64,000 nt of DNA from Macrostomum hystrix (GCA_950097015.1 CATNEN010000025.1:6076001-6140000), one strand, 5' to 3'; numbered from the stretch's first letter, positions 3,750 to 62,257 are shown. Made by a program: numbers and translations. Notes: generated by a model from the sequence alone, not told the origin.

Positions 3750-4270
3750 GTCTAGGAGAACGGGCCTGACTAAACGGGTAAAGCAGAATTGAACACACGC
3801 ACAGGTGTGCAGGCAGAACAATACGCAGTTAATATAGAAGAAACCTACAGCTACAACAACAAAAAAGCAGCAAGATTTAGAATCCGCAGGCATGTGTCTT
3901 GTGGCGCTATTTATATTTTATTTATAATTTATTATTCAAAGCTGATAGAGTAGTCTTGACGGACCCGATATGTATCGAAAACAGACATGAGCCTTGATTA
4001 ATTATGTTGCAAATAAGCAACTATTACAATATTACTTTTTAAATACTAAAACAGAAATTAACACTACTAACTATGAGAGTAGTACATCGCGAGTAACCCA
4101 CCCTAGATTTACTTAGACTTGTTGAACAGCCAGAAAAACGAAAAAACCAAAAAAACAGCCCACATGCAGTGCATTGAAGGTATAGACAGAACAAAAGCAA
4201 GATTATTGCTAATTGAAAAATAGAGGGCTAGTCAAACAAACCTAATTATGTGTGTCAGTATCTATGCGAG

Positions 4271-4646
4271 TCACATGGCCTGATGATAAGGTGACGGTGG
4301 CGGCAGTCCAGTAGCCGGGTGGGTATGATGCATGGCAACTGGTTGATGATGATGATGATGATGATGGTTGTGATACTGCTGATGGTAGGCGACGCCACCG
4401 CCGCTAGCAGATCCGTATGAGGCGTACTCATAGTGCATTCTGTACTCTGCATCAATCTGCTGCTGCTGCTGCTGAGGGTGCTGTGGATACTGGTGCTGCA
4501 TCAGGTGCTGCTGCTGATGCTGCTGGTAACTAGACTGCTGATAGCTGCCACTATAGTAATCCTTGCCGTCTGTCTCCACGTATTGGCTGTGCTGATGCAG
4601 CTGTTGATGCTGCACTGGATAGTTGTATTGGTGATGAAGCGTCTGT

Positions 4647-40300: not shown

Positions 40301-43300
40301 AGTGCTAAGTTATCTACATGTACGTGTTGCATTATTAAAGTCACACTTCTTATCTAAAGCGGATGGTGTTAATAGTGACAGGTAAAGTTTGAACTCTTGT
40401 TTTCTGAAACTTCTAAAAATTTTACTCTCGAGATTTTTTCTCAAGTAATAGATTTCAAATAAACATGAAGAATTTTTCTCTTTGCAAGTTTTTTAATTCG
40501 CGCCAAAGTTTGTTAGAACTTTTGCGCCGTGATGTTGACTTTACAGATGCAGATGAAAGTTGTCCTCGACGACAAGACAAATTACGATAGCGTATGTGAA
40601 TTCAATATAGACAGAAGTGCAATTGCTAATGATGTAAATAAAATTTACAATTGTCCACTCATGGACAACCAGTATTAGAAGAATGTTGCATTCACGGTCT
40701 GTGGGAAATTCAATACATATACTTTAAACCCAAGATAAGAGCATTGGCTTTTTTTAACCAAAATTAATAATAATTAATAACTGATTACACCTGCCCCAAT
40801 TGGGCCAGATGTGCAGCCGACAGCACAGCCGCAGCCATTGCGCGGCGCATCTGAAGACTGCGTACAGCTGTTCAGTCCATGGACTGGGGGGACCCACACC
40901 CACCTTCAATTATCCCAGCTAATGCTGGTACCCATTCAACAGCTGGGTGACACAAACTGTTTCAGTGGAGTCGGGAATCGAACCCCCGATCTTCAAGTCG
41001 TGAGTCCGACGCCCTAACCACTAGGCTACACCCTCTTTAACCAAGGATTCAGTAAAATTGCATTGGATGAGATGCGAGAGCAATTGTAATTTTAAGTATC
41101 AGGCCCCCCACTGAAAAAAACTTTAACCCAAAATTACTTTCTTGCTTACACACGTCCTTCTATTACTGGTGGTCCAATTTGAGTGCATAGCTAGTGACCT
41201 CAAGAGTGACTCCAAGCATTGTGACAGGATAAATATGACAGAATTGACACTTAGCGTCGGGTGCTTTGGCAGTTGTAAATGCTAGAAATCTGTCATAAAG
41301 GTTTTGTAATAGAAGCCGGCCTAATCGCTGAGAATCGGATACCAAGTGAGGCTGGTTCAGAAGTGCTCTCTCGGCTGCTATCGATAGACGCCGCTTCATC
41401 GCTGAAGTCTTTCAGTGAAGCAAGCGCACCGACATCTGACTGACTGCCGTCGGACAAGTCTGCACTGCACCCAACTGTTGGATCTTTGGGTGCGTTTTTG
41501 ATCCAGAAGTTACAGTCTCAGAGCTACTACAGAGTCCTAGCCGACTAGTTCTGAATCACCAGGTGTAAATTCCACTCACTTCGGCATTTTTTATTGATAA
41601 ATAAGCCCGCAACCCATTGTTTAAGATTACGATGAAAAGGGTTACAGAAAGCAAGCACTTCTATATTTGATGGAATGCTAAGATATAAAACAGGTTTAGT
41701 TCCCGCATCCGCTAGAAATCACTCGCAAACTACCAATATACTACTGCAAGCAGTCTATAATGCAGTGCCAAAAACAAGCAAACAAAAAGTAATTAATTGC
41801 TATTAATTAAGCCATGCAAAACAATGCATTTGAGCTAAAGATATAGGAAAAAATCATATAATACTAATGCTAGGAAACGACTCAGGAAAAAGTAACGTGA
41901 TTCTCGAGTGACTCATCAGGAGGTAATCAACTTTTACTAAACTGCACATCTAGTATTTAAAGAGAAGAGAACTTCGTTAGTAATTTTGGCGCCAGTTTAA
42001 ATACTCATTTTCAGGCTAGAGAAAGCGATAAGAACTCACTTGGATCAGGGAAGTCCATGTCCATCTCTGGCAGCCTGCGAATCATCCGCTGGTGGTACCA
42101 GTCGTTGTAGATCTTGTCCATCGTTTCCATGACAACTCCGTAACTAATATGAATGATTGGGAGTGCAAGTAATTCGTTTTAAGCTTTTATATACGCTTGC
42201 ATATATGCTTGCATAAGGAAGGACAGTGTTAGTTAATCCAGTGACTACTAACTCAGAGGGGCGCAATGCGCTTGATTCGGGGAAAACAGTTGAAAAACGC
42301 TAACAGTACATTTGCGCTAAAAGTACTCGAGAAGTACAAAAGCACAAGTCTGTTTTCTAACAGTAGTAAGACCACGCGAAAATTTCAAATGCCTGCATTT
42401 TATTTTTTCCGTATCTCCTAAAATATTCAACCAATCGCAATGAATATCTCGACGATGTTGACTCTGAAATTCCCAGTGGGAAAAACAGCATGGTCTTCCT
42501 ACTGTTCTACTGTTCATCCATTGTATCATTTTGAAGGGCCTTTTGTGGTATACCAAAAAATGGCGGATTGTTGCATGCATTGAATACGCTTGAGGTCATT
42601 GACTGGCTACAGTGGCATGGCGGTAGTTGCCTCACCACATCAAGTGTTGCCTGGCCCTCAGCTCCGCTCTGGGCAGGTCAACGCCAAACGACACTCGATT
42701 CACCGCGGCAAACAACCGGCCGCTGAAATCCTCCCGCTTCGCCTGCCGATCCTCTTCCAGGCTGAGGATTCTGTCGCGTAGGCTGGACACACTCAGATCC
42801 CACTCGGGCGTTGGCTCAGCCGCGGCACCAGCGGCCGCAGCCTCGACATCCTTGTGCAGCCGTTTCAACAGATTCAGCGTGTCGAGGGTGCAGCTGAGGC
42901 GGGGATTTCTACGAAGGAAGATCTCCTGCTCGGTGATGTAGGCGTCTATGGGAGTCATCGGCCGCTCGGGCGCCTGCAAACGGTTACGACAGGTAGGTGG
43001 TTCAGGGAAACCAATGTTTTAAAGGACCAAGCTACCAAGGACCAAGCCACCAAGGCCCAAGCCACCAAGGCCCAAGCCACCAAGGCCCAAGCCACCAAGG
43101 ACCAAGCCACCAAGGCCCAAGCTACCAAGGCCCAAGCTACCAAGGACCAAGCTATCAAGGACCAAGCCACCAAGGCCCAAGCTACCAAGGCCCAAGCTAC
43201 CAAGGACCAAGCCACCAAGGACCAAGCCACCAAGGCCCAAGCTACCAAGGCCCAAGCTACCAAGGACCAAGCTATCAAGGACCAAGCCACCAAGGACCAA

Positions 43301-46300
43301 GCCACCAAGGAACAAGCAACCAAGGCCCAAGCCACCAAGACCCAAGCCAACCAAAGGACCAAGCTACCAAGGACAAAGCTACCAAGGACCAAGCTATCAA
43401 GGACCAAGCCACCAAGGACCAAGTCACCAAGGCCCAAGCTACCAAGGCCCAAGCTACCAAGGACCAAGCTACCAAGGACCAAGCCACTAAGGAACAAAAA
43501 ATCCATACGATGTTAGCCGTGTGAAACAATGATGCCTGTATGCAGCTCCAGCATTACACACGAACTAGTGAAATATTTTAGCTTTTAATGACAATTTAAA
43601 GGTCGGAGAGTACCCGATGTTGAGAGGGTTAGAAAATAGTCGAGGATTGCTATCCCTAAGACAGGGAAAAGCGAAAAATCACAGTCCTTCGTAAATCCCC
43701 AACGTCTTATATTCCCAAACGTCTTGGAATCCCCAAGGTCTTGGAATCCCCAAGGTCTTGGAATCCCCAAGGTCTTGGAATCCCCAAGGTCTTGGAATCC
43801 CCAAGGTCTTGGAATCCCCAAGGTCTTGGAATCCCCAAGGTCTTGGAATCCCCAAGGTCTTGGAATCCCCAAGGTCTTGGAATCCCCAAGGTCTTGGAAT
43901 CCCCAAGGTCTTGGAATCCCCAAGGTCTTGGAATCCCCAAGGTCTTGGAATCCCCAAGGTCTTGGAATCCCTAACGTCTTGGAATTCCTAAGGTCTTGGA
44001 ACCCCCGACGTTTTATAATCCAGATGTTGAAGCGAAGCCACCAAGGACCAAGCTACCAAGGACCAAGCTATCAAGGACCAAGCCACCAAGGCCCAAGCTA
44101 CCAAGGCCCAAGCTACCAAAGACCAAGCTACCAAGGACCAAGCTACCAAGGCCCAAGCTACCAAGGACCAAGCCACCAAGGCCCAAGCTACCAAGGCCCA
44201 AGCTACCAAGGACCAATTAAGCCACCAAGGCCCAAGCCACCAAGGACCAAGCCACCAAGGACTAAGCCACCAAGGACCAAGCCACCAAGGACTAAGCCAC
44301 CAAGGCCCAAGCCACCAAGGACCAAGCCACCAAGGACCAAGCCACCAAGGCCCAAGCCACCAAGGCCCAAGCTACCAAGTACCAAGCTATCAAGGACCAA
44401 GCCACCAAGGCCCAAGCTACCAAGGCCCAAGCTACCAAGGACCAAGCCACCAAGGACCAAGCCACCAAGGCCCAAGCTACCAAGGCCCAAGCTACCAAGG
44501 ACCAAGCTATCAAGGACCAAGCCACCAAGGCCCAAGCTACCAAGGCCCAAGCTACCAAGGACCAAGCTACCAAGGACCAAGCCACTAAGGAACAAAAAAA
44601 TCCATACGATGTTAGCCCACGGACTACTCAAGTAGATGTTAGCCCACGGACTATCTACTAGTGGTCCTTGTGTTAGCCGTGTGAAACAATGATGCCTGTA
44701 TGCAGCCCCAGCGTTACACACGAACTAGTGAAATATTTTAGTTTTTAATGACAATTTTAAGCACTGTAATCTAGAAAACGTCCTCCAAACTTGCCTGCAT
44801 TCCGTCTAGGATCTCGTCCAATAGCGCGGCGACAATCCTCGCCGCCGTCTGCCGCCGCAGCCGGGCCTCCAGCTCGGTCCGCTTGCCGGCCGTGGCGTCC
44901 TCCTGCACGGCGATGCCCCGCAGGGTGACAACCAGGCGTGCGCCGCCGCACACCACAGGCGTTGTCTCCAGCTGCCATTGCTCTGCAAACAAGCCCGGCT
45001 TGTCCGACTTGAAAATGAAGGGAAAGTGAAGCGACTCGCCAGGTAGGAGGGCGCCGCTGCCTGTGTCGAAGTAGAACCGGCGCGGATTCTCCTGGACTAG
45101 GCCAAAAGGATTCGCTTTTGGTAGCTTCTGCAAGCAAATGGGTTAGTTGCCGTGGCGCTGATGTAGTGTAAGCTGACAGTGTTTATTTAGAAGCCTATCG
45201 TCCTAAAACTCTTTTAACAAACCTTTCACCGCAAGCACCAAGCCAACAAGGACCAAGCCAACAAGGACCAAGCAACTACGGACCAAGCTACCTCGGACCA
45301 ATCCACTAAAGGAACAAGCTAGCAAGGAACAAGCTACCAACGAACAAGCTACCAAGGAACAAGCTACCAAGGAACAAGCTACCAAGGAACAAGCTACCAA
45401 GGAACAAGCTACCAAGGAACAAGCTACCAAGGAACAAGCTACCTCGGACCAATCCACTAAAGGAACAAGCTAGCAAGGAACAAGCTACCAAGGAACAAGC
45501 TACCAAGGAACAAGCTACCTCGGACCAATCCACTAAAGGAACAAGCTAGCAAGGAACAAGCTACCAAGGAACAAGCTACCAAGGAATAAGCTACACCAAG
45601 GACCAATCCACTAAGTAGCAAGTTACTAAGGACCAAGCTACCAAGGACCAAGCTACCAAGCACCAAGTCTTCAAAGATCTTAAAATTCTTTAAACAAACC
45701 TTCCACCGATAAAATAGTACAGTGGACCCGTCATTTTCAATGTTAAGACATTGCGAGGTCGGCTTGCCGGCTGGCGTCTCCAGGATGACGCGGGCCTCGA
45801 TGCCGACGGTGTCCTGGTAGGAGGTCGGGTCACCGAGCCAGCGGGCGGGCTGGCCGCCGAACAGCAGGGATGGTCCGACCACCAGTGTACCGTCGGGCGC
45901 TTGCCTGCGCATGGTCGGAATTAGAATGGGATTGGGAATTAGAAGAGATCGGTTGCCACCGGTGGTTGGAGAGTACCCGATGTTGAGAGGGTTAGAAAAT
46001 AGTCGAGGATTGCTATCCCTAAGACAGGGAAAAGCGAAAAATCACAGTCCTTCGTAAATCCCCAACGTCTTATATTCCCAAACGTCTTGGAATCCCCGAC
46101 GTCTTATATTCCCAAACGTCTTGGAATCCCCGACGTCTTATATTCCCAAACGTCTTGGAATCCCCGACGTCTTATATTCCCAAACGTCTTGGAATCCCCG
46201 ACGTCTTGGAATCCCCAACGTTTTGGAATCCCAAGGTCTTGGAATCCCCAAGGTCTTGGAATCCCTAAGCTCTTGGAATCCCCAAGGTCTTGCAATCCCT

Positions 46301-49300
46301 AAGCTCTTGGAATCCCTAAGGTCTTGGAATCCCCAAGGTCTTGGAATCCCCAAGGTCTTGGAATCCCCAAGGTCTTGGAATCCCCAAGGTCTTGGAATCC
46401 CCAAGGTCTTGGAATCCCCAAGGTCTTGGAATCCCCAAGGTCTTGGAATCCCCAAGGTCTTGGAATCCCCAAGGTCTTGGAATCCCCAAGGTCTTGGAAT
46501 CCCCAAGGTCTTGGAATCCCCAAGGTCTTGGAATCCCCAAGGTCTTGGAATCCCTAAGGTCTTGGAATCCCCAAGGTCTTGGAATCCCTAAGGTCTCGGA
46601 ATCCCCAAGGTCTTGGAATCCCCAAGGTCTTGGAATCCCCAAGGTCTTGGAATCCCCAAGGTCTTGGAATCCCCAAGGTCTTGGAATCCCCAAGGTCTTG
46701 GAATCCCCAAGGTCTTGGAATCCCCAAGGTCTTGGAATCCCCAAGGTCTTGGAATCCCTAAGGTCTTGGAATCCCCAAGGTCTTGGAATCCCTAAGGTCT
46801 TGGAATCCCCAAGGTCTTGGAATCCCTAAGGTCTCGGAATCCCCGACGTTTTATAATCCCGATGTCGAAGCGATCTTTTAATTTGAGTCATTAAATGGGA
46901 ACTTCGGATGATGGCAAAAACTACTATGAGGTGTAATATTTTAGCATTTTCAATGACAAAAGCAGTTACAATAATTAATAAATGTTTTTCTGCTGCTGTC
47001 CAAGTAAATTTTAGCAGCTGAAATACTAACTACAAGCTACCAAATAGCTTTGCAGAACTGACAACAGAGAGAACCGCTGCATAGAATGAGCTGGAGTGTG
47101 CTCAGATAGTGAACTCGGTACTATTAACTGGCTAAACGAAAAACACTTTAATCACAACACTTTGAGCATAGCAGTCAACAGTGCAGATATCGCTCGTAGC
47201 TTACTCACTATCATCCTGCTTCATGCTGGAAAGGGGTTGTAGGGTGCAATGTGGATAGGAAAAAAGAAAAAAATACTGATATTTTTTGGATTGAGCAAGC
47301 AAGTTTACTAAAAAAACTGTGCTTGAAAGAAATGTCTATAGAATTTTCCTCACTGTCGCTGAGTCGACTCACTCTGTCCTTGTGCTCCTCTCTATAACCT
47401 AATTCCCAATCATCCTCTCATCGTTCACCTGTCATCCCTAGACGCAGACTCTGGTCCACGACGCTCTCCGCCGGCAGCCGACGATAACGATGTTGAGGAC
47501 CGGCTAGGCCGGGTTGTCACCGACGGCGTCACAGCGGTGGTCGGCCTGGAACGGACCGTGGCGTGTCCCGCCCCGCCTGCCGCGGCAGATCTGCCAATCA
47601 CCTCCAAGCGGTCAAAGTCCGGCAGGTGCGGATCCAGCTCCTCCATGACCTGCCGCAGCTCGGTTGTGCGCCTCTCATAGAACGGACCTTTCCAAGGATA
47701 GCGACGGGTGGCCGCGCCGCCGCGGGTCGGCGTTGTTGGCACCCAGTAAAGGCCGCGCTCGGATCGAGCCAGGCGGGAGTGGCCAACGTGCTCCATGGGA
47801 GGCGGGTAGCCCTTCTCAGTTTGGGTCAGGGTGGCGCTGTGGGGAAGGTTGACAGATTTAATGAGAAGCATTGTGACAAGCATATAAAAATTTAACCGCC
47901 TTTTTTAAATAAAATCAACGTTTTTTACATGCCATTACTAACAGTAGCAATAGTGAAAAATTTTGTCCGAAAAATAAACATTTTAACTTCATAACTGTTT
48001 AAGTTTGACATACGCTCCAGAATGTGAGAAAACATAATTTAAACACGAATATTCACTAAAATACAACGAGTTTAACCAAAGTAGGCTGGATGCTATGATT
48101 TGAAATCTTACAGCAAACCAGAGGATGAACTCTCTGGCATCTTTAAATTCAAGCGCGCCTTCCTGTATGTTTGATTTAGATTGGATTAAAATGCTGACGT
48201 GAAAGCAATTTTTGACTCTATGATCATCTGAAGCAAGTCTTGCTTCAGGCTTGCTACGACTTTCAGCAATCAGCAAGTCTACTCACTGTATTCCGCTATC
48301 TTCATCGCCGATTCGTCCGGCTTGTTTCCAGAATTCGCTGCCGGCGCGATCTTGAATGAGTTGTTGAATAGACGGGGTGGTTTGTTATAAGTACACGCGG
48401 TGCTTGCATGACTTAGTAGATTGGGATTGGATGCTTCAATAACCACGCGATGCTTGCATGATTTAGTAGATTGGGATTGGATGCTTCAATGACCACGCGA
48501 TGCTTGCGTGATTTAGTAGAATGGGATTGGATGCTTCAATGACCACGCGGTGCTTGTGTGATTACGTAGAATGGGATTGGATGCTTCAATAACCACGCTG
48601 TGCTTGCGTGATTTAGTAGATTGGGATTGGATGCTTCAATAACCACGCGATGCTTGCGTGATTTAGTAGATTGGGATTGGATGTTTTAACAATCACGCGA
48701 TGCTCGCATGATCAAGTGGCTCAGAATAGCCAGTGTGGTTTTTAAGAACTCGAAACTTTTTGCGATCGAGCTAGGATTGATGGTCGTGGTTCGTGACCAT
48801 AAGAACGTTTCAGCCAATAAGAGCAATGGAGCGTGCTGCAGTTTAGTTAAAATTAGGTTTCCTAACAGACATTAAATAACTCCTTTTTATTTTTTTGATA
48901 AGTTATAATCATTAGACCATGAAAGGCACAAACTCACATCCTTTTCCGTAGTCGTAGAACGGTATGGCCCTATCAATTAGATGCTTCTCTTCGTGCAAAG
49001 TTCGCTCCTGCTCACCGGCGTTCATCACTAACTCGTTGGGTGGCCTATGCAGCAGCTCTGGGTGACGATGGTTGCAATAACTGGATTTGCGCTTTAAGAA
49101 CAACTTACAATCACGTACAAAAGTCATATAGGGCATCAAAAGCTTACTGGAAATGTATCCCTGCTGTCGCTTCCTCTCGGCCATCTGCCGCTCCCAGTTG
49201 CGCAGCGCGGCGCTCTCTTCAGCAGCCAAATCTTCCACGGGAAACGGAAATCCTGCCGTTGCCGGCTTTTTTGCGTACTTCACCGACAGCCGGCCGGTTG

Positions 49301-52300
49301 TGTCGCCGCCACCGCCGCCGCGGCCACCACCGCCGCTTCCGGCAAGTTGACGCGGCGTCTTGAAAGCCTCCGGCACTTCCGCCTGGTTGAGCTGGCCTTT
49401 GAGCACAGCCAGTCGATAAAACTCTTCCGGACTGCCGAGGATGCTGTGCGGAATCACTCGTCCCTGCTCGTCGAAGCGCGGCCCCATGTGGGTGGCGGCA
49501 TCGGCGTTCTTCAACGGAGCATCTGGCGGCGCCCGGCGTAACAGGCCGATGCGCTTCAGCGGTGGGCGGCGCTCGGCCTCCGGGATCTCGCGTCGAACAG
49601 CCACCTTCTGGTAGGCGGCTGCGGCGGCGGCAGCATCCGCTTCGGCTCGCTTTGCAATCTGGCGCAATAGGAATCGACAATACTTTTTTCAGTAACTAGG
49701 TAAGACATATCAATACTAGGCCTTCAATTAGATAAAAATTCTGTTGGACAACAGACCCATAGATTCAGTTGGACAACCAACCCATAGATTCAGTTGGACA
49801 ACCGACCCATAGATTCAGTTGGACAACCGACCCATAGATTCAGTTGGACAACCGACCCATAGATTCAGTTGGACAACCGACCCATAGATTCAGTTGGACA
49901 ACCGACCCATAGATTCAGTTGGACAACCGACCCATAGATTCAGTTGGACAATCGACCCATAGATTCAGTTGGACAACCGACCCATAGATTCAGTTGGACA
50001 ACCGACCCATAGATTCAGTTGGACAACCGACCCATAGATTCAGTTGGACAACCGACCCATAGATTCAGTTGGACAACCGACCCATAGATTCAGTTGGACA
50101 ACCGACCCATAGATTTTAAACTACTAGTGTAAGTAGCCGGACAGTTACTCACATTGACCAGATCCTCCTCCTTGATCTGAAGCTTAGCGATCTCCTCATT
50201 AAAGAGTACATTTCGCCGCTGCGTCTCGGACGTAGAGTTCGCGTCCTCCTCTTTGTCAGGCGAAATGCCGTCTCTTTTCTGTTTTTGCTTCTTGTCTGGA
50301 CGAAGCGAGTTTAGTTTGATACATTTAAATTTTATTAAGAGTAGATCAAAATAAGTAAATTTTGTGAGCAAGAGCCAAACTAGCTACTGACAAAAGTGAT
50401 ACAAGTAAGCATGGACGCATATCATTTCAGGAAAAACGAATAATAAAATTCTTCCCCCAATACAAAAGATAAAATGGACAATTTTAAGCTAGCATTTACC
50501 CGTTCAAATTCAACTCAAACAAGTAGTGAAACTTTTAATTTTAGTGATCTCAAACAAAAATTTCTCCTTATGCAGCTAATTTACCATTCCCTATTTCATC
50601 TTCCGACTCTTCGAGGATTCCTGCAACAGTTTCGGTGTTGGAAAAAAACATTCAGTTCCCAAAATCAATTGAAATCAGAGAGAAATGATATTAATCTACC
50701 TGAGTTGAGTGGCAGAGTGGTCTAACGCGTTTGCCTTTCGCACTGAGGTCCCTAAGCTCGATTCCTCTGCGAGGCTACATTTATTTGGGGCGCAGCCGCG
50801 GAGAGAAGGCTTGGGGGCAGGTCGTGCAATTTACGCCCTTCAGGGCCAACCTCCAAGGCACAGTGAGAGTGTATAAAGTGCCTGACGATGAGAAAGTCAG
50901 GGCAGATGTACACCAGTGTGAGTGTGTGCCTGTGTACAGTATCCGCTTGTGCTTGTGTGCCCAGTGACCATGGCCCTCGTGCAAGTAGTATTAATAATAA
51001 TTATAATTCTTTTTATTACTTGCAGGTATTGGACACCCCTTAGGTAGATGACAGCCTCTAACTCACATGTAATTGGCTAACATTCAGGTAGATTAAACAA
51101 TCTACGACTAATTTGACTGGTAGAATTAAGTCATCAGGTGATAGTTCATGTAGGCCATGCTCAGTTTATCAAATATAATATAGTGAGCATTGTCTGCTGA
51201 GAGACACACAGAGAAGCAAAACTAAAAAAATTATTTCATAAAAAGTCAGTGAAAACTCTAGGAAATAAATATGGATATGCATAGCCACACGCGACTGAGG
51301 TAGTGTTCCGGCTGTGAGAATGGATGAAAGAATCGCCGATAAGAAATGAAGTCTGAGTCGCAGCTCAACAATACAATGTCGTTCCGGAAGCGAGCCCGAT
51401 GAGAGTGAAAGTGTCACAGAATAGCAAACAGCAAAAAAGTACATTCAGGATGCAGCAACCGATGAGAGAAGGAAATTTCTCAAATTGTGAAGGAAAATAA
51501 ACTTGTCAAACATTTGTATACCATCGGGAATTTCTGCTTCCTTAGCAACCAGTTTCTCTGGAAGAAAGAACAAAAAAGCTTTTTGGGAAAAAATATTGTA
51601 AACGCGCTCAAATTCATAAAATTTAAATTCATTCTCTAAAACACTATATAACCTCCAATTTACAAAGACAAAGAATCAGAAGCACCGAATTAGTTAAAGA
51701 AATAAAGCAAGCAACTCACTTGGAGCCACAGAAACACGTCTACTGCTGCTACCTTGCTTAGACATGCCAATCAGTTCGATTGAAAAAAATATGTGCACAA
51801 TTTGAAAAGGCTTCACCTCGTTTAGAGAAAGACAAAAATGTGCAGAAATATTTAAATTTAAACTGGCGCCAAGAGCCCAGAAACTTGCTCACTGGTTGCT
51901 ACTACGGCAACGAGGGAGGGGTAGGACGCGAGAGTGAAAGAAGTGGTCACTAAATGGACATACGTGGGTCACTAGGCTAATTATGACCAGTTTTATTATA
52001 TTAGACTAGCCAAAAACCCCCCACCTGGCATTCAGCTTGAATCGCACACAGGTGCTTTCTCTTCGTATTAAGAGAATGCTGCAGTTTTTAGTACCTATTA
52101 TAATTTGCGTCGAATTTATTCTCTAAATTGCTCACATTATGAGACACTGCTCGTGCGCGAAAAAGTAGAAAGGAAAATCGACGGACTCTCGCTAAATCTC
52201 TCTTTCTCTCCAAGAGTCGTGCACCTGCGTAAGACAGGAAGCCTTACTGTCCTTATTGAAGCCTTGATAGTGATAAAGATCTATACATTAAGGAAAAAAA

Positions 52301-55300
52301 TTAGCCATGTACGAGCCTCGTATATGCCAATCTCAAGCTGTGTCAACCTCAGCAGTGCTTAAATATATATTTAATTATTCACTTCACGACTATCTATCGA
52401 ATATTCAATTCGATATAAATTATAAGTATGCTCGTTTTTTCTAGCAACTCATAGATTTGCTAAAACCATTACATGCATATGTAGCTTTTTGCGTTCTACC
52501 CGTAGTTGAGAAAATCTCAATGTCTAGTAAATCTATCAGCAAATCACGGTGAACAAGTATAGCAGTCTCGTTGAAAAGCACTGTTCTATGGCCACGGTTG
52601 AAGCACATTATACCATAACCTTTTTGCCCGGTGGGCAGAAAGTCTTGCCCGTTAATAGCCATAGACTAATTAATGCCCCGGCAATGCCCGGAAAAAAGGC
52701 TTCGACCAATAGGAATGGCTTACTGAGGCAAAAAAATGTCTATGGCACAATAGTATATAATACCCATGCTTTTAGGGCGTTAATGGCGTTTTAGGGCGTT
52801 AATAGGGCGTTAATCAGAGGTCCAGTCGAAAAATACCATAGACAATAAACGTTTTCAACTTGTCATTGGGAAAGGCAGGGAAAGAAAAGCCATAGACAAT
52901 TAAAAGAATGTGTACGAGGATTACTGTTATATCATATTTCCCGATACTAAGCACAAATAATTGAGTCAATCAATCGTACTCAAAACCGAAGACCTTCGAC
53001 CGCCTGGCGCCTGCTGCATAATAATGGAGCTCTTTCTGGCGAACGACATGCTTGAAACTGACTTCTTTCGCGACAGACCTAACGTTGCCTCGCTCGTGGA
53101 CATTGTGCAACAGTTAGGAAGAGTTGAACCGCGTCCCCAGTTGAAATTTAATCGCTCCAATAAAAGTCGCTGCTATAGGAGGCTAATATTGGACGATGGG
53201 GGCCTCTGTGGATTCCATACAGTTATTTATATTGTCAGCTGTGTTTCTTTAATCTACTTCCCCATGCATCCTTCCTCCTCTCTCCTCGTCCTGTCGCTCC
53301 TCTCTCCTTTCTCCCGTCCGTTGCCATGGTTACAAAGCTAGGCAGCGGATCCCAGACCTCAGTATAGAGCGGCAGCCGACAGTAGAGAAAGGGAGTCATC
53401 CGCAAGGGTTTAATTGGATCTTTGCCCCTACTCACCTGCACAACTGCTCCCCGCGTCCCTCCACTCTCAGCTAACAGATGAGAAAACTCAAACTCATTTG
53501 AAACTTCTCAAATCTCTTCCCAATTGTATACTAAATCACAAAATCTAGTCGCCTACTCAAATCCCCACCAAATGCGGCATCGCATCAGGGGGTCCGGATT
53601 AAAGAAAATATTTAGCCGCTAATCCAAGCAAGGTGAGCTGCTTTCTTTGGATCAATAATTTAATATTGGCACTTACAATTTCAGTTTTTCTATTTACGCA
53701 CACATTCCACAGACTGCAGTGGGAAAATTCACTGTCACAATATTTTAAGTAATTAGTGAATTAGTAATTAGCAACGGCTTGTTTTAATAGAAACTTTACT
53801 GTAATACTGCTGGGTTATGACCAAGCTCATGGCTGTATTGGGTTTATGGACATGACCTCATACAAGCGGGGTGTCTGTTTTCTGCAGCTAAAAGTACTTC
53901 TATACCTTTAAACAGCTGATACATCCTCACATACATGTCGTCCGTGTTTTCCCTGGCACAGTGTAACGGAGCAAGCGTTTCTGCATTTACTTGAATATTA
54001 AAAGCTATCAACTTAACACTGCATTCCACTACTTTGATAAGTTTATCCTTCATTCCTCATTTGGCTTCCGATTTGCATCAATTTAGCTCTCATTCATGCT
54101 TAGCAACAAAAGTACATATGAAATTTTTTATCTCCCACAGCCGATCAGAAGTATACATTTTCTAAACTAGCTATCAGTTTATGAAACCATATTTTTGTAA
54201 TTCCAATACCAATTCGAATCCTTAATCCAATTTGCAACGATCTCTATTGATACTGAATATTAATCCCAATCCCAATCTGATCCCAATCCTAATCTCGATC
54301 CCAATCCCGACCCCAATCCCGATCCCGATCCCGATCCCGATATCAATCACAATCCAAATCCCAATCCCGATCGCGATCCCAATCCCGATCCCAATCCCAA
54401 TCCTGATCCCAATCCCGATCCCGCGATCAATCCTAATCCCAATCCCGATCCCGAGCCCTTCTCAAATCGCAATTTTAACGATTCCAATCCAATCAAGATT
54501 TTAATCCTGATTGTAACTTCTATTTAGATTTAGAAACAAATTTTAACCCGAATTTTAATCCTAATGCTTAAAATTTGATCCCAATCTCAAACTGAATGTT
54601 GATCCCCAAATGGAACTTATCTGACTGGGTTTCTTCTTAACACGAGTTAAGAATCAGATTTCCGAATCCATTAGGGGCTTGTTGACTGGTGGTTTGAGGT
54701 CCAACTCAAGACTCAGACGTCGGGGGTTAGACTCCAAACTTCCCTGCAACAATTTGTGTCCGCAAGCAAGACGATGAGGAGTTGGCTGTTCAGCAGAACG
54801 TCATAAATTATTTTCATGAGATTCGAACTCCGGACCTCTTGTTTAAAGAATCCCGGGTTTCGGCCCCAATATGCTACAGTTTGTTCAACTTAAAAATGTC
54901 CCAAAATAGTCGCTTTGATCCCAAATAAATTTAGGCCTCAATTCAGGATTCGAACTCGCGGCCATCTTCCCACTTTTGTCTTACCTCGCCTAGTCGAAGT
55001 CTGGGTAGAGGAACGGGATCTGAAGCCGCCTTTCGCAGGTCCCAGGGTCTGCGAGACCAGAAACCAGCCGCCCGAGCGACCGCGACGATCTCTATGGGCG
55101 GCGTCTCTTGTTGCCATGGAGACTAAGAGTCTATACTCGTATTCTCGTAACTTGCTACAGTGACTTCTTCTTTCGAAAAGAATATTAAATAGTTGAAAAG
55201 TTGGCCCGAAACCCGCCTAAAACCGCTGCTCACTTAGACCCTTATCTTATCCAAACAACATAGTACTCATGTTTGCCCAGCTGGGAAACAAATACATGTA

Positions 55301-57376
55301 AAGAGTTCTTTCAAACAACTTAAACACCAGTTTAGATATCTAACTGCTAGCTATGGATGCAATCTGGACTGAATTTTTATTTCTAGATTTGCATTTCCCG
55401 GTTTTCAGACGCCCAGGTCCTTATTTATCACCCGATCGGCGATTTCCCTATTTGTTGATTTCCCCATTCCTCTCCATTTCCCGATTCATTCATTTCCCTT
55501 TTTCGTCTATGCCCTATTCGACGATTTCACTTTTTCGTGCATTTCCGCTAAATTGTCTATTTCGCTATTAATCGATTTCCCAATTCGTCGATTTCCATAT
55601 GCATTGATTTTCCTTTTTTTCGTTGATTTCCCCTTATTCGTCGATTTCCCCTTATTCGTCGATTTCCCCTTATTCGTCGATTTCCCCTTATTCGTCGATT
55701 TCCCCTTATTCGTCGATTTCCCCTTATTCGTCGATTTCCTAATTATTAGATTTCCCAATTCCTATATTTACCTATTCGTCTATTTCCCTTTATTCGTCGA
55801 TATCCCTATTCGTCGATTTCCCAATTCGCCGATTTCCCTTTTTTCATCGATTTTCCTATTAGTCGATATCCCTGTTCATCCATATCCTTATTCGTCGATT
55901 TCCCCTTATTCGTCGATTTCCCCTTATTCGTCGATTTCCCTTATTCGTTGATTTCCCCTTATTCGTCGATTTCCCCTTATTCGTCGATTTCCCCTTATTC
56001 GTCGATTTCCCCTTATTCGTCGATTTCCCCTTATTCGTCGATTTCCCCTTATTCGTCGATTTCCCCTTATTCGTCGATTTCCCCTTATTCGTCGATTTCC
56101 CCTTATTCGTCGATTTCCCCTTATTCGTCGATTTCCCCTTATTCGTCGATTTCCCCTTATTCGTCGATTTCCCCTTATTCGTCGATGTCCCTTATTCGTC
56201 GATATCCCCTTATTCGTCGATTTCCCCTTATTCGTCGATTTCCCCTTATTCGTCGATTTCCCCTTATTCGTCGATTTCCCCTTATTCGTCGATGTCCCTT
56301 ATTCGTCGATTTCTCCCTTATTCGTCGATTTCCCCTTATTCGTCGATTTCCCCTTATTCGTCGATTTCCCCTTATTCGTCGATGTCCCTTATTCGTCGAT
56401 ATCCCCTTATTCGTCGATTTCCCCTTATTCGTCGATTTCCCCTTATTCGTCGATTTCCCCTTATTCGTCGATTTCCCCTTATTCGTCGATTTCCCCTTAT
56501 TCGTCGATTTCCCCTTATTCGTCGATTTCCCCTTATTCGTCGATTTCCCCTTATTCGTCGATTTCCCCTTATTCGTCGATTTCCCCTTATTCGTCGATTT
56601 CCCCTTATTCGTCGATTTCCCCTTATTCGTCGATTTCCCCTTATTCGTCGATTTCCCCTTATTCGTCGATTTCCCCTTATTCGTCGATTTCCCCTTATTC
56701 GTCGATTTCCCCTTATTCATCGATTTCCTAATTATTCGATTTCCCAATTCCTATATTTACCTATTCGTCTATTTCCCTTTATTCGTCGATATCCCTATTC
56801 GTCGATTTCCCAATTCGCCGATTTCCCTTTTTTCATCGATTTTCCTATTAGTCGATATCCCTGTTCGTCCATATCCTTATTCGTTGATTTCCCAATTCTT
56901 CGATTTCCCAATTCTTCGATTTCCTAATTCTTCGATTTCCCAATTCCTATATTTACCTATTCGTCTATTTCCCTATTCGTCGATATCCCTATTCGTCGAT
57001 ATCCCTATTCGTCGATATCCCTATTCGTCGATTTCCCAATTCGTCGATTTCCCTTTTTTCATCGATTTCCCTATTAGTCGATATCCCTGTTCATCCATAT
57101 CCTTATTCGTTGATTTTCTAATCCTGTAATTAATTTTCTAATTCGTCAATTTCCCTAAAATATGTCTTACGTTTGTCATTAGTGATTACCTGCCACTTTG
57201 ACTTGTCGACGCATTCGAATTGCGGACACCAGGCCGGTGGAAACTCGACTAAAGTTGCCGCTGCTGCCGCCGCTGCCCGCACTTTTAATAGGGCCGACGG
57301 CTGCGCCGGCGCTTCTAGGATGCGCTGACTTCCGCGACTGCTGATTTTGCTGCTGCTTTTGGTTCGGCTTGGGCAT
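37394..57376 (-). CDS. MYCBPAP: MYCBP-associated protein (MYCBPAP/AMAP-1), motile-cilium central-apparatus protein, multi-exon
   Basis: Phase-consistent exons are 57376-57190 (one of four candidate first exons), 50295-50153, 49658-49148, 49057-48938, 48350-48287, 47836-47429, 45904-45700, 45127-44795, 42973-42636, 42143-42040, 41459-41343 (tentative), 40268-40245 (tentative), 38227-38127 and 37684-37394. Motifs recognised by recall: VIPHSILGSPEEF, ALRNWERQMAERKRQQ, RPPNELVMNAGE, GSEFW, LEVIGR, GPSLLFGGQPARW, RFYFDTGSGALLPGE..FIFKSDKPGLFAEQWQLETTP. Confidence 0.88.
37830..38087. repeat. 23-bp intronic minisatellite (GGTTCAGGATCTCACAGGTCAT[G/T])n
   Basis: Direct array of about 11 copies, with degenerate units extending to ~37700. 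Confidence 0.95.
38522..40135. repeat. 27-28-bp intronic minisatellite (CCCTCACCCAGACTGCCTTTTGATT[G/A]G)n, about 58 copies
   Basis: Direct array. It is the source of the HPDCLLI/WVRANQKA pseudo-ORFs. Confidence 0.97.
40770..41032 (-). mobile_element. tRNA-derived SINE, family 1 (most complete copy)
   Basis: The minus-strand head is TGTAGCCTAGTGGTTAGGGCGTCGGACTCACGACTTGAAGATCGGGGGTTCGATTCC (A box and B box). The core is CACCCAGCTGTTGAATGGGTACCAGC, and the tail is AT-rich. Confidence 0.85.
43024..43497. repeat. 15-bp minisatellite (CCAAGG[A/C]CCAAGC[T/C]A)n, array 1
   Basis: Direct array. Sister arrays lie at 44036-44590 and 45236-45665. Confidence 0.95.
43605..44036. mobile_element. Dispersed repeat: unique head + 17-bp minisatellite (GTCTTGGAATCCCCAAG)n + tail, copy 1
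   Basis: The ~125-bp head (GGAGAGTACCCGATG...CCCAAACGTCTTGG) and the tail (CCCGACGTTTTATAATCC.GATGT.GAAGCGA) recur at 45968-46872. No TIR or TSD was recognised. Confidence 0.7.
44036..44590. repeat. 15-bp minisatellite, array 2
   Basis: Same unit as 43024-43497, followed by a duplicate of the flank at 43490-43597. Confidence 0.95.
45236..45665. repeat. 15-bp minisatellite variant (ACCAAGGAACAAGCT)n with higher-order ~60-bp blocks
   Basis: Direct array inside intron 45128-45699. Confidence 0.92.
45968..46872. mobile_element. Dispersed repeat: unique head + 17-bp minisatellite + tail, copy 2 (longer array)
   Basis: Same head and tail as 43605-44036. The internal array is roughly 2-3 times longer. 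Confidence 0.7.
48405..48710. repeat. 50-bp intronic tandem repeat, about 6 copies
   Basis: TTGGGATTGGATGCTTCAAT recurs at period 50. Confidence 0.93.
49753..50112. repeat. 25-bp intronic minisatellite (GACCCATAGATTCAGTTGGACAACC)n, about 14 copies
   Basis: Direct, nearly homogeneous array. Confidence 0.96.
50705..51010 (+). mobile_element. tRNA-derived SINE-like element, family 2
   Basis: GAGTGGCAGAGTGGTCTAACGCG (A box) and GCTCGATTCC (degenerate B box), followed by a non-tRNA body and a (TAA)n-like tail. Only one copy is present in the window. Confidence 0.6.
51895..51911. promoter_or_regulatory. X-box-like RFX site with long spacer (GTTGCTACTACGGCAAC)
   Basis: Inverted GTTGC/GCAAC half-sites lie 130 nt upstream of candidate first exon 51765-51720. 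Confidence 0.4.
53320..53333. promoter_or_regulatory. RFX X-box (GTTGCCATGGTTAC)
   Basis: Matches the palindromic GTTGCCATGGCAAC consensus at 12/14. It lies 217 nt upstream of candidate first-exon ATG 53103. Confidence 0.65.
54255..54455. repeat. Degenerate hexamer microsatellite (ATCCC[A/G])n
   Basis: Directly visible. It gives the IPIPIP pseudo-ORF. Confidence 0.9.
55110..55123. promoter_or_regulatory. RFX X-box (GTTGCCATGGAGAC)
   Basis: Matches the consensus at 12/14 and overlaps the ATG (55117) of a candidate first exon. Confidence 0.62.
55590..57120. repeat. 18-bp minisatellite (TTATTCGTCGATTTCCCC)n with duplicated degenerate blocks
   Basis: A homogeneous core spans ~55900-56720. A ~160-bp diverged block repeats at ~55737-55895, ~56725-56885 and ~56935-57115. 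Confidence 0.97.
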
Positions 57377-57694
57377 TCCGATATTTAAACTGATTCAGTC
57401 CTATGGATTTCGCTAATGGCAATCCTAATTTTCTGGTTCTGTCTTGTTGCAACAAAAAACTTTTATAGCTAATTGTCAGTGAGCCAAGGGCAAGAAATAT
57501 GAAAGCAAGGAAAAATTTGAGTCGCTGCTATTGTAGAATTGAGACAATGAATTTCCCCCCTTAGAGGGATCTGGGAACAGAACGATGGCTATCCCCGAAT
57601 CCTTTCAACTGCATTCATTCATATCACTCGCTCTTTCCTATTTCCAAATTTTTCTCTCCCTCTTACACAACCCTATTGACTTCGCGGGCAATTC

Positions 57695-57708
57695 GTTGTC
57701 ATGGCAAC
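57695..57708. promoter_or_regulatory. RFX X-box (GTTGTCATGGCAAC) at the distal MYCBPAP promoter
   Basis: Matches the consensus at 13/14 and lies 319 nt upstream of ATG 57376 of a ciliary gene. Confidence 0.72.
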
Positions 57709-61525: not shown

Positions 61526-62257
61526 ATGGCTGGCGCTAAGATCAGAGCCTGTTCCCCCTTATCTAACAACTGCTTATCCTATACTCAATGCCAGCCAGCC
61601 ATGCCTAATCTTGCATCGTCTGTGTGCCAGGAGTCCTGGCCAGCACCAATCGTGGCCCAGCCTGTGACGTTTCGGCACCATGGCGTCAATGGCGACACCA
61701 TTGAAACTTCTGCTGCGCGTCGCCGAACACTCTGCGGCGGCGAGCTGTGCCGTCTGCTGCCGGCTATTGACGAAATTTCTTCGCCATCATCAACCACTTC
61801 TATGGCTTCCTCCTCAACTGTTGTTGCTGCTACAGCCCCGCAGTCTTCTGCTTCTGCGCCATCCACTTTGCAGCAGCGTCGGCGACGTCAGCGCCAACCG
61901 CCCGAGGAGCTGCTGCAGCAGCAGCGTCAGCATCGCAGGCTGAGCCTACCCGCCCTCGGCCTACTGGACAGTGTTCCCGAACTGCCCGAAGTGATCCAAC
62001 CGGAATCGGCTGCTCCTACTCAGCTGCCATTGGAGAAGCATTTCCAGCAGCAGTTGCTTTTAATGCAAAAGAGAACAGCCAGGACGCCGCCAGCGCAGCG
62101 TAGGTTAACTCCGCCTAGCGACAGGAATGGTCGGCGTTTGTTGATTCTCTGTCCTATTCCCGAGGCGGAAGCCGCCGCCGCTGCTGCCGCCGCCGCAGCC
62201 GCCGCCGCTGCTGCCGCCTCTCCTACATGTTTGTCGCCCGAGTCGGGTCACTTTTAG
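61526..62257 (+). CDS. Uncharacterised low-complexity ORF/exon (243 aa; S/Q/A-rich, RRLSLP motif, poly-Ala)
   Basis: A GC-rich open frame sits in AT-rich flanks, with a strong acceptor TTTGTTTTATTTCAG| at 61498 in frame 27 nt before the ATG. No domain was recognised, and it may be one exon of a larger gene. Confidence 0.55.
   Translation: MAGAKIRACSPLSNNCLSYTQCQPAMPNLASSVCQESWPAPIVAQPVTFRHHGVNGDTIETSAARRRTLCGGELCRLLPAIDEISSPSSTTSMASSSTVVAATAPQSSASAPSTLQQRRRRQRQPPEELLQQQRQHRRLSLPALGLLDSVPELPEVIQPESAAPTQLPLEKHFQQQLLLMQKRTARTPPAQRRLTPPSDRNGRRLLILCPIPEAEAAAAAAAAAAAAAAAASPTCLSPESGHF

What the first reader, a model, noticed from the sequence alone, without database searches (positions are those of the whole stretch)
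51720..57708. MYCBPAP has four candidate first exons, each paired with an RFX X-box-like motif
Seen: four ATG-initiated exons all end in phase 1, matching the common acceptor at 50295. They are 57376-57190 (MPKPNQKQ..; G|GTAATC), 55117-54985 (MATRDAAH..; G|GTAAGA), 53103-52980 (MSTSEATL..RKKSVSS..; A|GTACGA) and 51765-51720 (MSKQGSSSRRVSVAP; A|GTGAGT). X-box-like motifs lie at 57695, 55110, 53320 and 51895. Established: RFX factors drive ciliary genes through X-boxes, and MYCBPAP is a central-apparatus component. Inference: a promoter array could give cell-type-specific N-termini (epidermal, protonephridial, sensory, germline). The termini are rich in RRxS-type kinase motifs.
Basis: partly seen in the sequence, partly recalled or inferred. 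Interest (0 to 1): 0.7.

Follow-up and report, generated by a model that had tools for sequence, protein, structure and literature searches.

The report
Four-promoter array on a flatworm cilia gene
A flatworm gene for a core part of the beating cilium can start at four different first exons, each next to a binding motif for the cilia regulator RFX; the layout is kept in a second flatworm species, so it looks like a working way to make four versions of the protein's front end.

Summary
The minus-strand gene is MYCBPAP (Pfam PF14646). The four ATG exons and four motifs lie at the stated coordinates.

- **Motif excess:** three motifs are canonical X-boxes, against 0.01 expected in these 8 kb. The fourth has one perfect half-site.
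- **RNA in this species:** spliced contigs from three runs of one study show E4 (51765-51720) joined to the acceptor at 50295. E3 skips E4, so the two exclude each other in these contigs.
- **Conservation:** the Macrostomum lignano orthologous locus has all four exons in the same order. ATGs, reading frames and phase-1 donors are kept, and pN is below pS in each.
- **Promoter footprints there:** a perfect X-box lies upstream of E1, an X-box upstream of E3, and the same half-site upstream of E4. ATGGCAAC forms the E2 start codon.
- **Gene models:** an M. lignano gene model starts with the E2-type exon joined directly to exon 2.

RFX dependence, transcription start sites and cell-type use are untested. 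E1 rests on conservation alone. This scan has noted X-boxes at other genes of this genome, but not this array.

The parts
57695..57708 (-). X-box P1, GTTGCCATGACAAC, 318 nt upstream of the E1 ATG
   Evidence: It is the best conserved block of the E1 upstream region against M. lignano, where L012:3723-3737 reads GTTGCCAATGGCAAC with its 5' flank GCTTCA..TTGG (z 3.2, 3 of 200 shuffles). The same perfect site is in the second M. lignano copy at L018:6054-6068.
57190..57376 (-). E1, candidate first exon: 62 codons plus 1 base, donor G|GTAATC
   Evidence: Sequence. The homologue at L012:4182-4359 keeps the ATG, the frame and the phase-1 donor. The last 20 residues, NFSRVSTGLVSAIRMRRQ(V/I)K, are 95% identical. 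pN 0.28 against pS 0.56.
55515..57087 (.). 18-nt minisatellite, about 91 copies, in the intron between E1 and E2
   Evidence: M. lignano has an unrelated array with a unit of about 60 nt in the same intron, L012:4370-5460. This array is the reason E1 was left out of the read laying stretch.
55110..55123 (-). X-box P2, GTCTCCATGGCAAC; its ATG (55117-55115) is the E2 start codon
   Evidence: In M. lignano only CATGGCAAC(A/G)AGAG is kept, so conservation of the motif cannot be separated from conservation of the codons Met-Ala-Thr-Arg.
54985..55117 (-). E2, candidate first exon: 44 codons plus 1 base, donor G|GTAAGA
   Evidence: The homologue at L012:5816-5900 has 28 codons plus 1 base. The start MATR(D/E), the end FRSRSSTQTS..R and the donor are kept, and the length difference is an exact 16 codons. 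M. lignano model P0161 (PAA92712.1) starts MATREF..YWR and runs straight into exon 2. In this species there was zero contig depth over 54926-55440 in three RNA runs.
53320..53333 (-). X-box P3, GTAACCATGGCAAC, 216 nt upstream of the E3 ATG and 70 nt upstream of the furthest contig end
   Evidence: The M. lignano counterpart is GCTACCTGGGCAAC at L012:8000-8013, 195 nt upstream of its ATG.
53284..53297 (-). Conserved promoter block GCGACAGGACGAGG just downstream of X-box P3
   Evidence: It is the best local match of the E3 upstream regions between the two species (L012:8024-8037; z 2.3, 6 of 200 shuffles). Weak on its own.
52980..53103 (-). E3, first exon: 41 codons plus 1 base, donor A|GTACGA; transcribed from at least 53250
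   Evidence: The joint 52980|51557 has GT..AG ends in runs X3 and X5. One contig is colinear with the genome over 52980-53250, and X4 has a contig over 52988-53186. The homologue L012:8209-8317 has 28 of 35 aligned residues identical, with pN 0.09 against pS 0.71. An E3-type exon is also present in paralogue B of both species.
51895..51911 (-). X-box-like P4, GTTGCCGTAGTAGCAAC: one perfect half-site; 132 nt upstream of the E4 ATG when read as GTTGCCGTAGTAGC
   Evidence: M. lignano has GTTGCCATTGGAGC at L012:9859-9872, 128 nt upstream of its ATG. Paralogue B has GTTGCCATGGTGAT at L011:8412-8425.
51854..51872 (-). Conserved core-promoter block TTGGCGCCAGTTTAAATTT, 22-25 nt downstream of X-box P4 (22 from 51895, 25 from 51898)
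   Evidence: 18 of 19 bases are identical to L012:9897-9915, at almost the same spacing (z 7.2, 0 of 200 shuffles). The E4 contig of run X3 reaches 51847.
51720..51765 (-). E4, the major first exon: MSKQGSSSRRVSVAP plus 1 base, donor A|GTGAGT; transcribed from at least 51847
   Evidence: The joint 51720|50295 has contig depth 39-46 in X3 and X4, including one 2381-nt contig. The same N-terminus is in transcript contigs of a close relative, L009 and L010, and in M. lignano P0093, P0162 and P0163. 14 of 15 residues are identical to M. lignano.
51522..51557 (-). Microexon m1, 36 nt, encoding (K)KLVAKEAEIPD; the acceptor used by E3
   Evidence: Joint 52980|51557. It is conserved at L012:10191-10226 with 10 of 11 residues identical. 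It is also in paralogue B, and in model P0164.
50585..50620 (-). Microexon m2, 36 nt, encoding (G)ILEESEDEIGN; conserved, but not seen in RNA here
   Evidence: Splice sites and frame. The homologues read ILEESEDETGD in L012 and ILEESEDELED in paralogue B. Contig depth was zero.
50153..50295 (-). Common exon 2, with a phase-1 acceptor at 50295
   Evidence: Long contigs of runs X3, X4 and X5 cover it. It is 87% identical to M. lignano.
37397..49613 (-). Remaining MYCBPAP coding exons
   Evidence: Pfam PF14646 hits, best E = 1e-29. Exon map from tblastn of P0001 against the window.

Best explanation
The 5' end of this macrostomid flatworm's MYCBPAP gene is an array of four alternative first exons (E1-E4) spread over 5.7 kb. 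MYCBPAP is the orthologue of FAP147, a protein of the C2a projection of the ciliary central apparatus.

Each first exon has its own start codon and ends in phase 1. Any one of them can therefore be spliced in frame to common exon 2. Splicing is either direct or through one or both of two optional 36-nt microexons. The result is one conserved protein body carrying one of four short, basic, serine-rich front ends.

Each first exon has an RFX X-box or a strong X-box half-site beside it. The most likely mechanism is that RFX factors license all four promoters in ciliated cells, while other promoter-specific elements decide which one fires where and how strongly.

**Shown:**
- The exons and motifs, and their excess over chance.
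- Use of E4 (major) and E3 (minor, via m1) as mutually exclusive 5' exons in this species.
- An E2-type gene model in M. lignano.
- Conservation of all four exon-plus-motif modules, with purifying selection.

**Inferred:**
- RFX binding.
- Separate transcription start sites.
- Transcription of E1.
- Any cell-type specificity, and any role of the R-R/K-x-S motifs as kinase sites.
For: **Gene identity.** PF14646 hits in five exons.

**Motif excess.** 3 sites within 2 mismatches of the palindrome in 8 kb, against 0.01 expected. All consensus hits in the 64 kb lie in this gene. The genome holds 4.3 times more matches to the X-box pattern than to its reversed control, and has four RFX DNA-binding-domain loci.

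**RNA.** Contigs of X3-X5 are spliced with GT..AG ends. The E4|exon 2 joint has contig depth 39-46. The E3|m1 joint has depth 3-4 and skips E4. Both 5' exons are colinear with the genome for 82 and 147 nt upstream of their ATGs, with the X-boxes 48 and 70 nt further up.

**Close relative.** Its transcripts carry the E4-type start.

**M. lignano orthologue locus L012.** E1h, E2h, E3h, E4h, m1h, m2h and exon 2 lie in the same order. All ATGs, frames and phase-1 donors are kept, and length differences are whole codons. pN/pS is 0.28/0.56, 0.24/0.68, 0.09/0.71 and 0.04/0.42 for E1 to E4.

**Promoter footprints.** Flanking DNA is otherwise unalignable. For P1 the best conserved block is the X-box. 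For P4 it is a block at fixed spacing from the X-box half-site.

**Gene models.** M. lignano model P0161 starts with the E2-type exon joined to exon 2. P0093 starts with the E4 type.

**Not repeats.** The four modules share no sequence beyond the motif, and each is single-copy in the genome. They are neither recent duplicates nor transposon copies.
Against: - E1 has no transcript support in any species examined. Two look-ups were blank, though both tools could easily miss it.
- E2 had zero contig coverage in three RNA runs of this species. The tool warns that a hole proves nothing.
- The E2 start codon lies inside its X-box, so that motif must be transcribed. Its conservation is confounded with coding constraint.
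- The P4 motif, at the most used promoter, is only a half-site.
- Contigs cannot show transcription start sites.
- All RNA evidence in this species comes from one study.
- No strict X-box lies beside the alternative first exons of the oyster gene.
- No RFX binding or knock-down data were found for any flatworm.
Confidence: 0.68

Rival explanations
1. Only the two proximal promoters, E3 and E4, are real. E1 and E2 are conserved for another reason, for example as small separate ORFs, as upstream non-coding transcripts, or as enhancer sequence that happens to be open. In that case the M. lignano E2-type model is an annotation artefact.
For: In this species only E3 and E4 have RNA support, and E2 has zero depth. 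E1 has no transcript or protein record. The N-terminal two thirds of E1 and the middle of E2 are poorly conserved.
Against: Both exons keep an ATG, an open frame and a phase-1 GT donor in two species whose synonymous sites are near saturation, and their indels are whole codons. The DNA match for E2 spans the donor site. Model P0161 joins E2h precisely to exon 2 in frame. An ATGGCAAC-initiated first exon is also modelled for paralogue B (P0164).
Confidence: 0.17
2. The X-boxes do not belong one to each promoter. They form a homotypic cluster of RFX sites that acts as one distributed enhancer, or partly as a repressor, for the whole gene. This would resemble C. elegans F25B4.2, where the proximal X-box drives expression and the distal one represses it.
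For: Genes with several X-boxes that interact non-additively are documented (PMC3245922). Other tight X-box clusters exist in this genome, for example four within 150 bp at C1:3247328-3247476. The most active promoter, P4, has the weakest motif.
Against: In both species each motif stays close to one particular first exon, at similar distances: 216 against 195 nt for P3, and 132 against 128 nt for P4. The DNA between them is unalignable. This reading also does not exclude promoter-proximal action, so the two can both hold.
Confidence: 0.1
3. The exons are internal cassettes spliced consecutively from one upstream promoter.
For: No start-site data exist. All exons share phase 1.
Against: The E3 contig skips E4 and joins m1. 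The E4 contig joins exon 2. Neither shows an upstream splice within 82-147 nt of its ATG. None of the ATG-to-donor units is a multiple of 3 long, so including any of them whole after another phase-1 exon would break the frame. The M. lignano models start at E2h or E4h and skip the other first exons.
Confidence: 0.03

Closest known systems
RFX/DAF-19 target genes with promoter-proximal X-boxes (C. elegans, Drosophila and mammalian ciliary genes)
   Same: A 14-bp imperfect palindrome matches GTHNYYATRRNAAC. It lies within a few hundred bp of the start of a ciliary structural gene and is conserved between species. The genome encodes RFX DNA-binding domains.
   Different: There are four motifs, each beside a different coding first exon of one gene. 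One of them contains the start codon. Nothing is known experimentally about RFX in this animal.
C. elegans genes with multiple X-boxes, such as F25B4.2 (Chu et al. 2011, PMC3245922)
   Same: More than one conserved X-box in a single ciliary gene, with the suggestion that they tune where and how strongly it is expressed.
   Different: In F25B4.2 the two motifs sit upstream of one promoter; one activates and one represses. Here each motif accompanies its own first exon, so the protein's N-terminus changes as well.
Alternative-promoter cilia and flagella genes, such as mammalian SPAG16 L and S (PMC5282894)
   Same: A central-apparatus gene that uses alternative promoters to make isoforms.
   Different: SPAG16S is a truncated protein made from an internal promoter, and SOX5 was the factor studied. 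Here four short alternative N-termini are fused to the same full-length body.
Predicted MYCBPAP isoforms of bivalve molluscs (NCBI models for Crassostrea virginica, Magallana gigas and Mytilus)
   Same: Several unrelated N-terminal exons are each joined to the common exon that starts K(L/I)K..GTPEK. Some carry RRMSV-type motifs like RRVSVAP of E4. In the oyster locus three such exons lie at L020:15402, 22751 and 25566, upstream of the common exon at 27266.
   Different: No X-box within 2 half-site mismatches lies beside the oyster exons. The exons are not alignable with the flatworm ones. These are automatic models, not studied isoforms.

Membership tests
MYCBPAP / FAP147 (Pfam PF14646) | Sequence match to the family profile above the curated cut-off | tested here: met
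   Five exon ORFs hit PF14646 at 28.6-104.3 bits against a cut-off of 24.5, together covering profile positions 26-439. The gene is colinear with an 893-aa orthologue.
MYCBPAP / FAP147 (Pfam PF14646) | Location in the C2a projection of the central apparatus | not testable with these tools
   Known for Chlamydomonas FAP147 and mouse MYCBPAP (PMC13345628, PMC11759756). Inferred here from orthology only.
RFX-regulated (X-box) ciliary promoter | Match to the X-box consensus | tested here: met
   P1, P2 and P3 match GTHNYYATRRNAAC. P4 matches only the looser Drosophila-type GYTRYY-N2-RRHRAC pattern, with one perfect half-site.
RFX-regulated (X-box) ciliary promoter | Motif lies close to and upstream of the transcription start | tested here: inconclusive
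   The X-boxes lie 48 nt (P4) and 70 nt (P3) beyond the furthest 5' contig ends, but contigs do not define start sites. P1 has no RNA data. The P2 motif contains the start codon, so it must be transcribed.
RFX-regulated (X-box) ciliary promoter | Motif conserved in orthologous promoters of another species | tested here: met
   P1 is a perfect palindrome in both M. lignano copies. P3 and the P4 half-site are kept at similar distances from their ATGs. P2 conservation is confounded with coding.
RFX-regulated (X-box) ciliary promoter | An RFX factor is present in the organism | tested here: met
   Four loci match PF02257 (RFX_DNA_binding) at 70-97 bits.
RFX-regulated (X-box) ciliary promoter | RFX binds the site and expression depends on it | not testable with these tools
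   This needs ChIP or CUT&RUN, RNAi and reporter mutation. No flatworm data were found.
Alternative first exons (alternative promoters) | Each exon has its own start codon and a donor phase compatible with a shared downstream exon | tested here: met
   All four are ATG-initiated and end in phase 1, in this species and in M. lignano.
Alternative first exons (alternative promoters) | Mutually exclusive use in mature RNA | tested here: inconclusive
   Met for E3 against E4 in this species. Met for E2 and E4 as separate M. lignano models. Not tested for E1.
Alternative first exons (alternative promoters) | Independent transcription start sites | not testable with these tools
   Only assembled contigs were available. 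They cannot show RNA 5' ends.

The most novel reading that the evidence does not exclude
The array is an old device: it predates the MYCBPAP duplication in macrostomids, and its logic may be shared with molluscs. In it, RFX-licensed promoters each attach a different phosphorylatable N-terminal peptide to the C2a projection protein. Different ciliated cell types, such as epidermis, protonephridia, sensory cells and sperm, would then build central apparatuses with different regulatory inputs. In one module the RFX site and the translation start are the same 14 bases.
Probability: 0.2. Interest if true: 0.65.

Novelty: new variant of a known kind. Interest (0 to 1): 0.55.

Why it matters
X-box/RFX control of cilia genes and alternative promoters are each well known. 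A conserved array in which every alternative coding first exon of one axonemal gene has its own X-box has not, as far as my searches reached, been described.

If the four promoters are used in different ciliated cell types, this locus would be a compact natural system for asking how one pan-ciliary factor is combined with cell-type inputs. It could also show whether the N-terminus of a C2a projection protein tunes ciliary beating. Macrostomum lignano is transgenic-capable, which I state from my own knowledge and did not check here. If so, reporters for each module are feasible.

The finding also corrects the gene models. Two conserved 36-nt microexons and up to three extra protein starts are missing from single-isoform annotations.

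Tried and rejected
1. **Duplicated promoter modules.** Pairwise local alignment found nothing beyond the X-box. One shared 12-mer, ATAGCAGCGACT, between P1 and P3 occurs at chance frequency in the genome: 30 against 14 for the control, with about 26 expected.
2. **Transposon-borne X-boxes.** Each module is single-copy in the 220-Mb genome.
3. **The fifth consensus hit at 42123-42136 as an internal promoter.** It lies inside a coding exon, 42148-42038, so I treat it as a coding coincidence.
4. **Word searches with the E1 and E3 peptides.** Both were blank, which is uninformative given the tool's length window.
5. **Exact-product look-ups of the E1 and E2 ORFs.** Both were blank.
6. **tRNA genes in the introns.** None were found, despite B-box-like sequences.
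7. **L011 as the M. lignano orthologue.** I first took it for the orthologue. It is a 40%-identical paralogue, so the comparison was redone on the true orthologue L012.
8. **X-boxes beside the oyster alternative exons.** None were found at the strict threshold.
9. **Steps not run.** The single read-laying run was limited to 6,000 letters, and a stretch reaching E1 would have included the 1.6-kb tandem array, which the tool says it turns away.

Full report
**What is there.**

On the minus strand the window carries a MYCBPAP gene. Five exon ORFs between 49.7 and 42.6 kb hit Pfam PF14646 at up to 104 bits. An 893-aa orthologue maps colinearly from 50305 to 37397.

MYCBPAP is the orthologue of Chlamydomonas FAP147, a component of the C2a projection of the central apparatus (PMC13345628, PMC11759756).

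The four candidate exons are exactly as described:
- E1 57376-57190, 187 nt.
- E2 55117-54985, 133 nt.
- E3 53103-52980, 124 nt.
- E4 51765-51720, 46 nt.

Each starts with ATG, is open to a GT donor, and ends in phase 1.

**The motifs.**

Three are canonical X-boxes: GTTGCCATGACAAC at 57708-57695, GTCTCCATGGCAAC at 55123-55110, and GTAACCATGGCAAC at 53333-53320.

The fourth, at 51911-51895, has one perfect half-site (GTTGCC). Its partner is either imperfect (AGTAGC) at the usual spacing, or perfect (AGCAAC) at an unusual 5-nt spacing.

- The consensus GTHNYYATRRNAAC hits four places in the 64 kb, all in this gene. The fourth hit, at 42123, is inside a coding exon and is probably a coincidence of codons.
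- The 8-kb 5' region has three sites within two mismatches of the ideal palindrome, against 0.01 in shuffles.
- Across the 220-Mb genome the pattern is 4.3 times more frequent than its reversed control.
- The genome has four RFX DNA-binding-domain loci.

The motif is therefore likely to be in use in this animal.

**RNA in this species.**

The run search returned four runs of one study that hold 23-29% of the sampled words of the 44.7-53.2 kb query. By my rough estimate that is about its exon share. I laid three of them, plus run X1 from a second study, on 50120-55440. The three runs (X3-X5) give spliced contigs with GT..AG intron ends, so they are RNA.

- **E4:** E4 is joined directly to the acceptor at 50295. 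Contig depth is 39-46, and one 2381-nt contig runs from 51822 through the joint. The E4 contig of X3 reaches 51847, which is 82 nt upstream of the ATG and 48 nt short of the X-box.
- **E3:** E3 is joined to an acceptor at 51557, not to 50295. Depth is 3-4, in two runs. One contig is colinear with the genome from 52980 to 53250, which is 70 nt short of the X-box. That joint skips E4, so E3 and E4 exclude each other in these contigs.
- **Microexons:** the acceptor at 51557 opens a 36-nt microexon, m1 (51557-51522). A second 36-nt unit with good splice sites, m2 (50620-50585), keeps the frame too but had no depth.
- **E2:** depth was zero. The tool warns that a hole proves nothing.
- **E1:** it could not be included. 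The call was limited to 6,000 letters, and the 1.6-kb 18-mer array between E1 and E2 is the kind of repeat the tool turns away.

**Relatives.**

A profile-free search with the 251-aa N-proximal exon found one close protein, P0001. It is encoded on a transcript contig of a related flatworm. The 5' end of that contig reads MSKQGGSSRRVSVAP|NKKQKQ, which is the E4-type start joined to exon 2.

A word search with P0001 then found two kinds of Macrostomum lignano proteins:
- the true orthologue P0093, 82% identical;
- a 40%-identical paralogue, P0004.

The paralogue also exists in this genome, on contig C3.

The orthologue's genomic locus, L012, contains homologues of all four first exons, both microexons and exon 2, in the same order:
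- E1h 4182-4359
- E2h 5816-5900
- E3h 8209-8317
- E4h 10001-10046
- m1h 10191-10226
- m2h near 11090
- exon 2 near 11426

In every case the ATG, the open frame and the phase-1 donor are kept, and length differences are whole codons. For E2 the lengths are 133 against 85 nt.

Synonymous sites are close to saturation (pS 0.42-0.71). Non-synonymous change is much lower: pN is 0.28, 0.24, 0.09 and 0.04 for E1 to E4. The surrounding DNA does not align. I read this as purifying selection on four coding exons.

**The motifs in the relative.**

- **P1:** M. lignano has a perfect palindrome, GTTGCC-AAT-GGCAAC. Together with its 5' flank it is the best conserved block of the whole E1 upstream region. 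It recurs in the second M. lignano copy.
- **P3:** GCTACCTGGGCAAC lies 195 nt before the ATG, against 216 nt here. It is followed by a shared block, GCGACAGGAMGAGG.
- **P4:** the GTTGCC half-site lies 128 nt before the ATG, against 132 nt here. About 25 nt downstream lies TTGGCGCSAGTTTAAATTT, the strongest footprint found (z 7.2).
- **P2:** only CATGGCAACRAGAG is shared. These bases are also the codons Met-Ala-Thr-Arg, so RFX constraint and coding constraint cannot be separated.

**Gene models.**

M. lignano proteins P0093, P0162 and P0163 start with the E4-type exon. P0161 (PAA92712.1) starts MATREFSYKNRTSGAFRSRSSTQTSYWR and continues straight into exon 2. Its model begins at the ATG inside CATGGCATGGCAAC. 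I could not check what evidence those models rest on.

Paralogue B keeps an E3-type exon, an E4-type exon, m1, m2 and exon 2. One of its models, P0164, starts with another ATGGCAAC-initiated exon joined to m1. At least part of the layout therefore predates the duplication.

**Reading.**

The simplest account is an array of four alternative promoters and first exons. E4 is the main one in the RNA samples at hand.

- More than one 5' exon is transcribed.
- E3 skips E4.
- None of the four ATG-to-donor units is a multiple of 3 long, so whole-unit inclusion after another phase-1 exon would break the frame.

What is not shown:
- That RFX binds here.
- That each exon has its own start site.
- That E1 is transcribed at all.
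- That E2 is used in this species.
- Any cell-type assignment.

The basic R-R/K-x-S motifs are real and conserved: RRVS in E4; RKKS, RKSS and RR(S/A)S in E3; RSRSS in E2. Similar motifs (RRMSV) sit in mollusc N-termini. Their role as kinase sites is a guess.

**Comparison with what is known.**

X-box control of cilia genes is textbook. Genes with several X-boxes are described in C. elegans (PMC3245922), and central-apparatus genes with alternative promoters exist (SPAG16, PMC5282894).

NCBI's automatic models for oysters and mussels also show several unrelated N-terminal exons joined to the common MYCBPAP exon. In the Crassostrea virginica locus three such exons lie within 12 kb upstream of it, but with no strict X-box beside them.

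I found no paper on MYCBPAP promoters, or on RFX sites in flatworms. I rate this a new variant of a known kind. It is a solid, conserved and testable locus rather than a new principle.

All searches used single exons by reference or stored database proteins.
- Other notes of this scan report X-boxes at other genes of this genome. One of them prompted me to look for a second flatworm genome. I did not test those claims.

Noticed in passing
window 51522-51557 and 50585-50620 (minus strand): Two 36-nt frame-preserving microexons lie between the first exons and exon 2. Both are conserved in M. lignano and in the paralogue. m1 is used with E3 but skipped by E4 transcripts, which hints that splicing depends on the promoter used. 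m2 has no RNA support yet.
   Followed up: partly
window 55515-57087; L012:4370-5460: The intron between E1 and E2 holds a large minisatellite in both species: an 18-mer with about 91 copies here, and a unit of about 60 nt in M. lignano. The repeat units are unrelated.
   Followed up: no
window 50654-51009: An intronic element draws very high summed contig depth (2000-3300) from many contigs that are 90-95% alike, with many loose ends. It looks like an abundant, expressed interspersed repeat. ARAGORN finds no tRNA there.
   Followed up: partly
window 42123-42136: A full X-box consensus match, GTTTCCATGACAAC, lies inside a MYCBPAP coding exon. The M. lignano paralogue likewise has GTTACCATGGTAAC inside coding sequence (residues VTMVT). 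These are probably codon coincidences.
   Followed up: partly
G000:C3:8683836-8692524 (L013-L017): A second, divergent MYCBPAP paralogue exists in this genome and in M. lignano, about 40% identical to the window gene's family. It has its own E3-like first exon and microexon m1, and an X-box-like site just after exon 2.
   Followed up: partly
G000:C1:3247328-3247476 and C1:3674706-3674741: Tight clusters of X-boxes occur elsewhere in the genome, for example four within 150 bp and two within 36 bp. Genome-wide, the X-box pattern is 4.3 times more frequent than its reversed control.
   Followed up: no
L009 and L010 (proteins P0001 and P0092): The close relative's two transcript contigs differ by GYISKLLHRPP against GYISTHFPELLHRPP. 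This points to alternative splice-site use at the intron that interrupts the 49.6-48.9 kb exon region.
   Followed up: no
L020:15402-27430 (Crassostrea virginica): The oyster MYCBPAP gene has at least three alternative coding first exons joined to one common exon. A partial copy of the end of the first one lies directly upstream of the common exon.
   Followed up: partly
window 61527-62257 (plus strand): A long open frame rich in Ala, Ser and Gln starts at an ATG at 61527, about 3.8 kb beyond X-box P1 on the opposite strand. It may be a neighbouring gene. I did not examine it.
   Followed up: no
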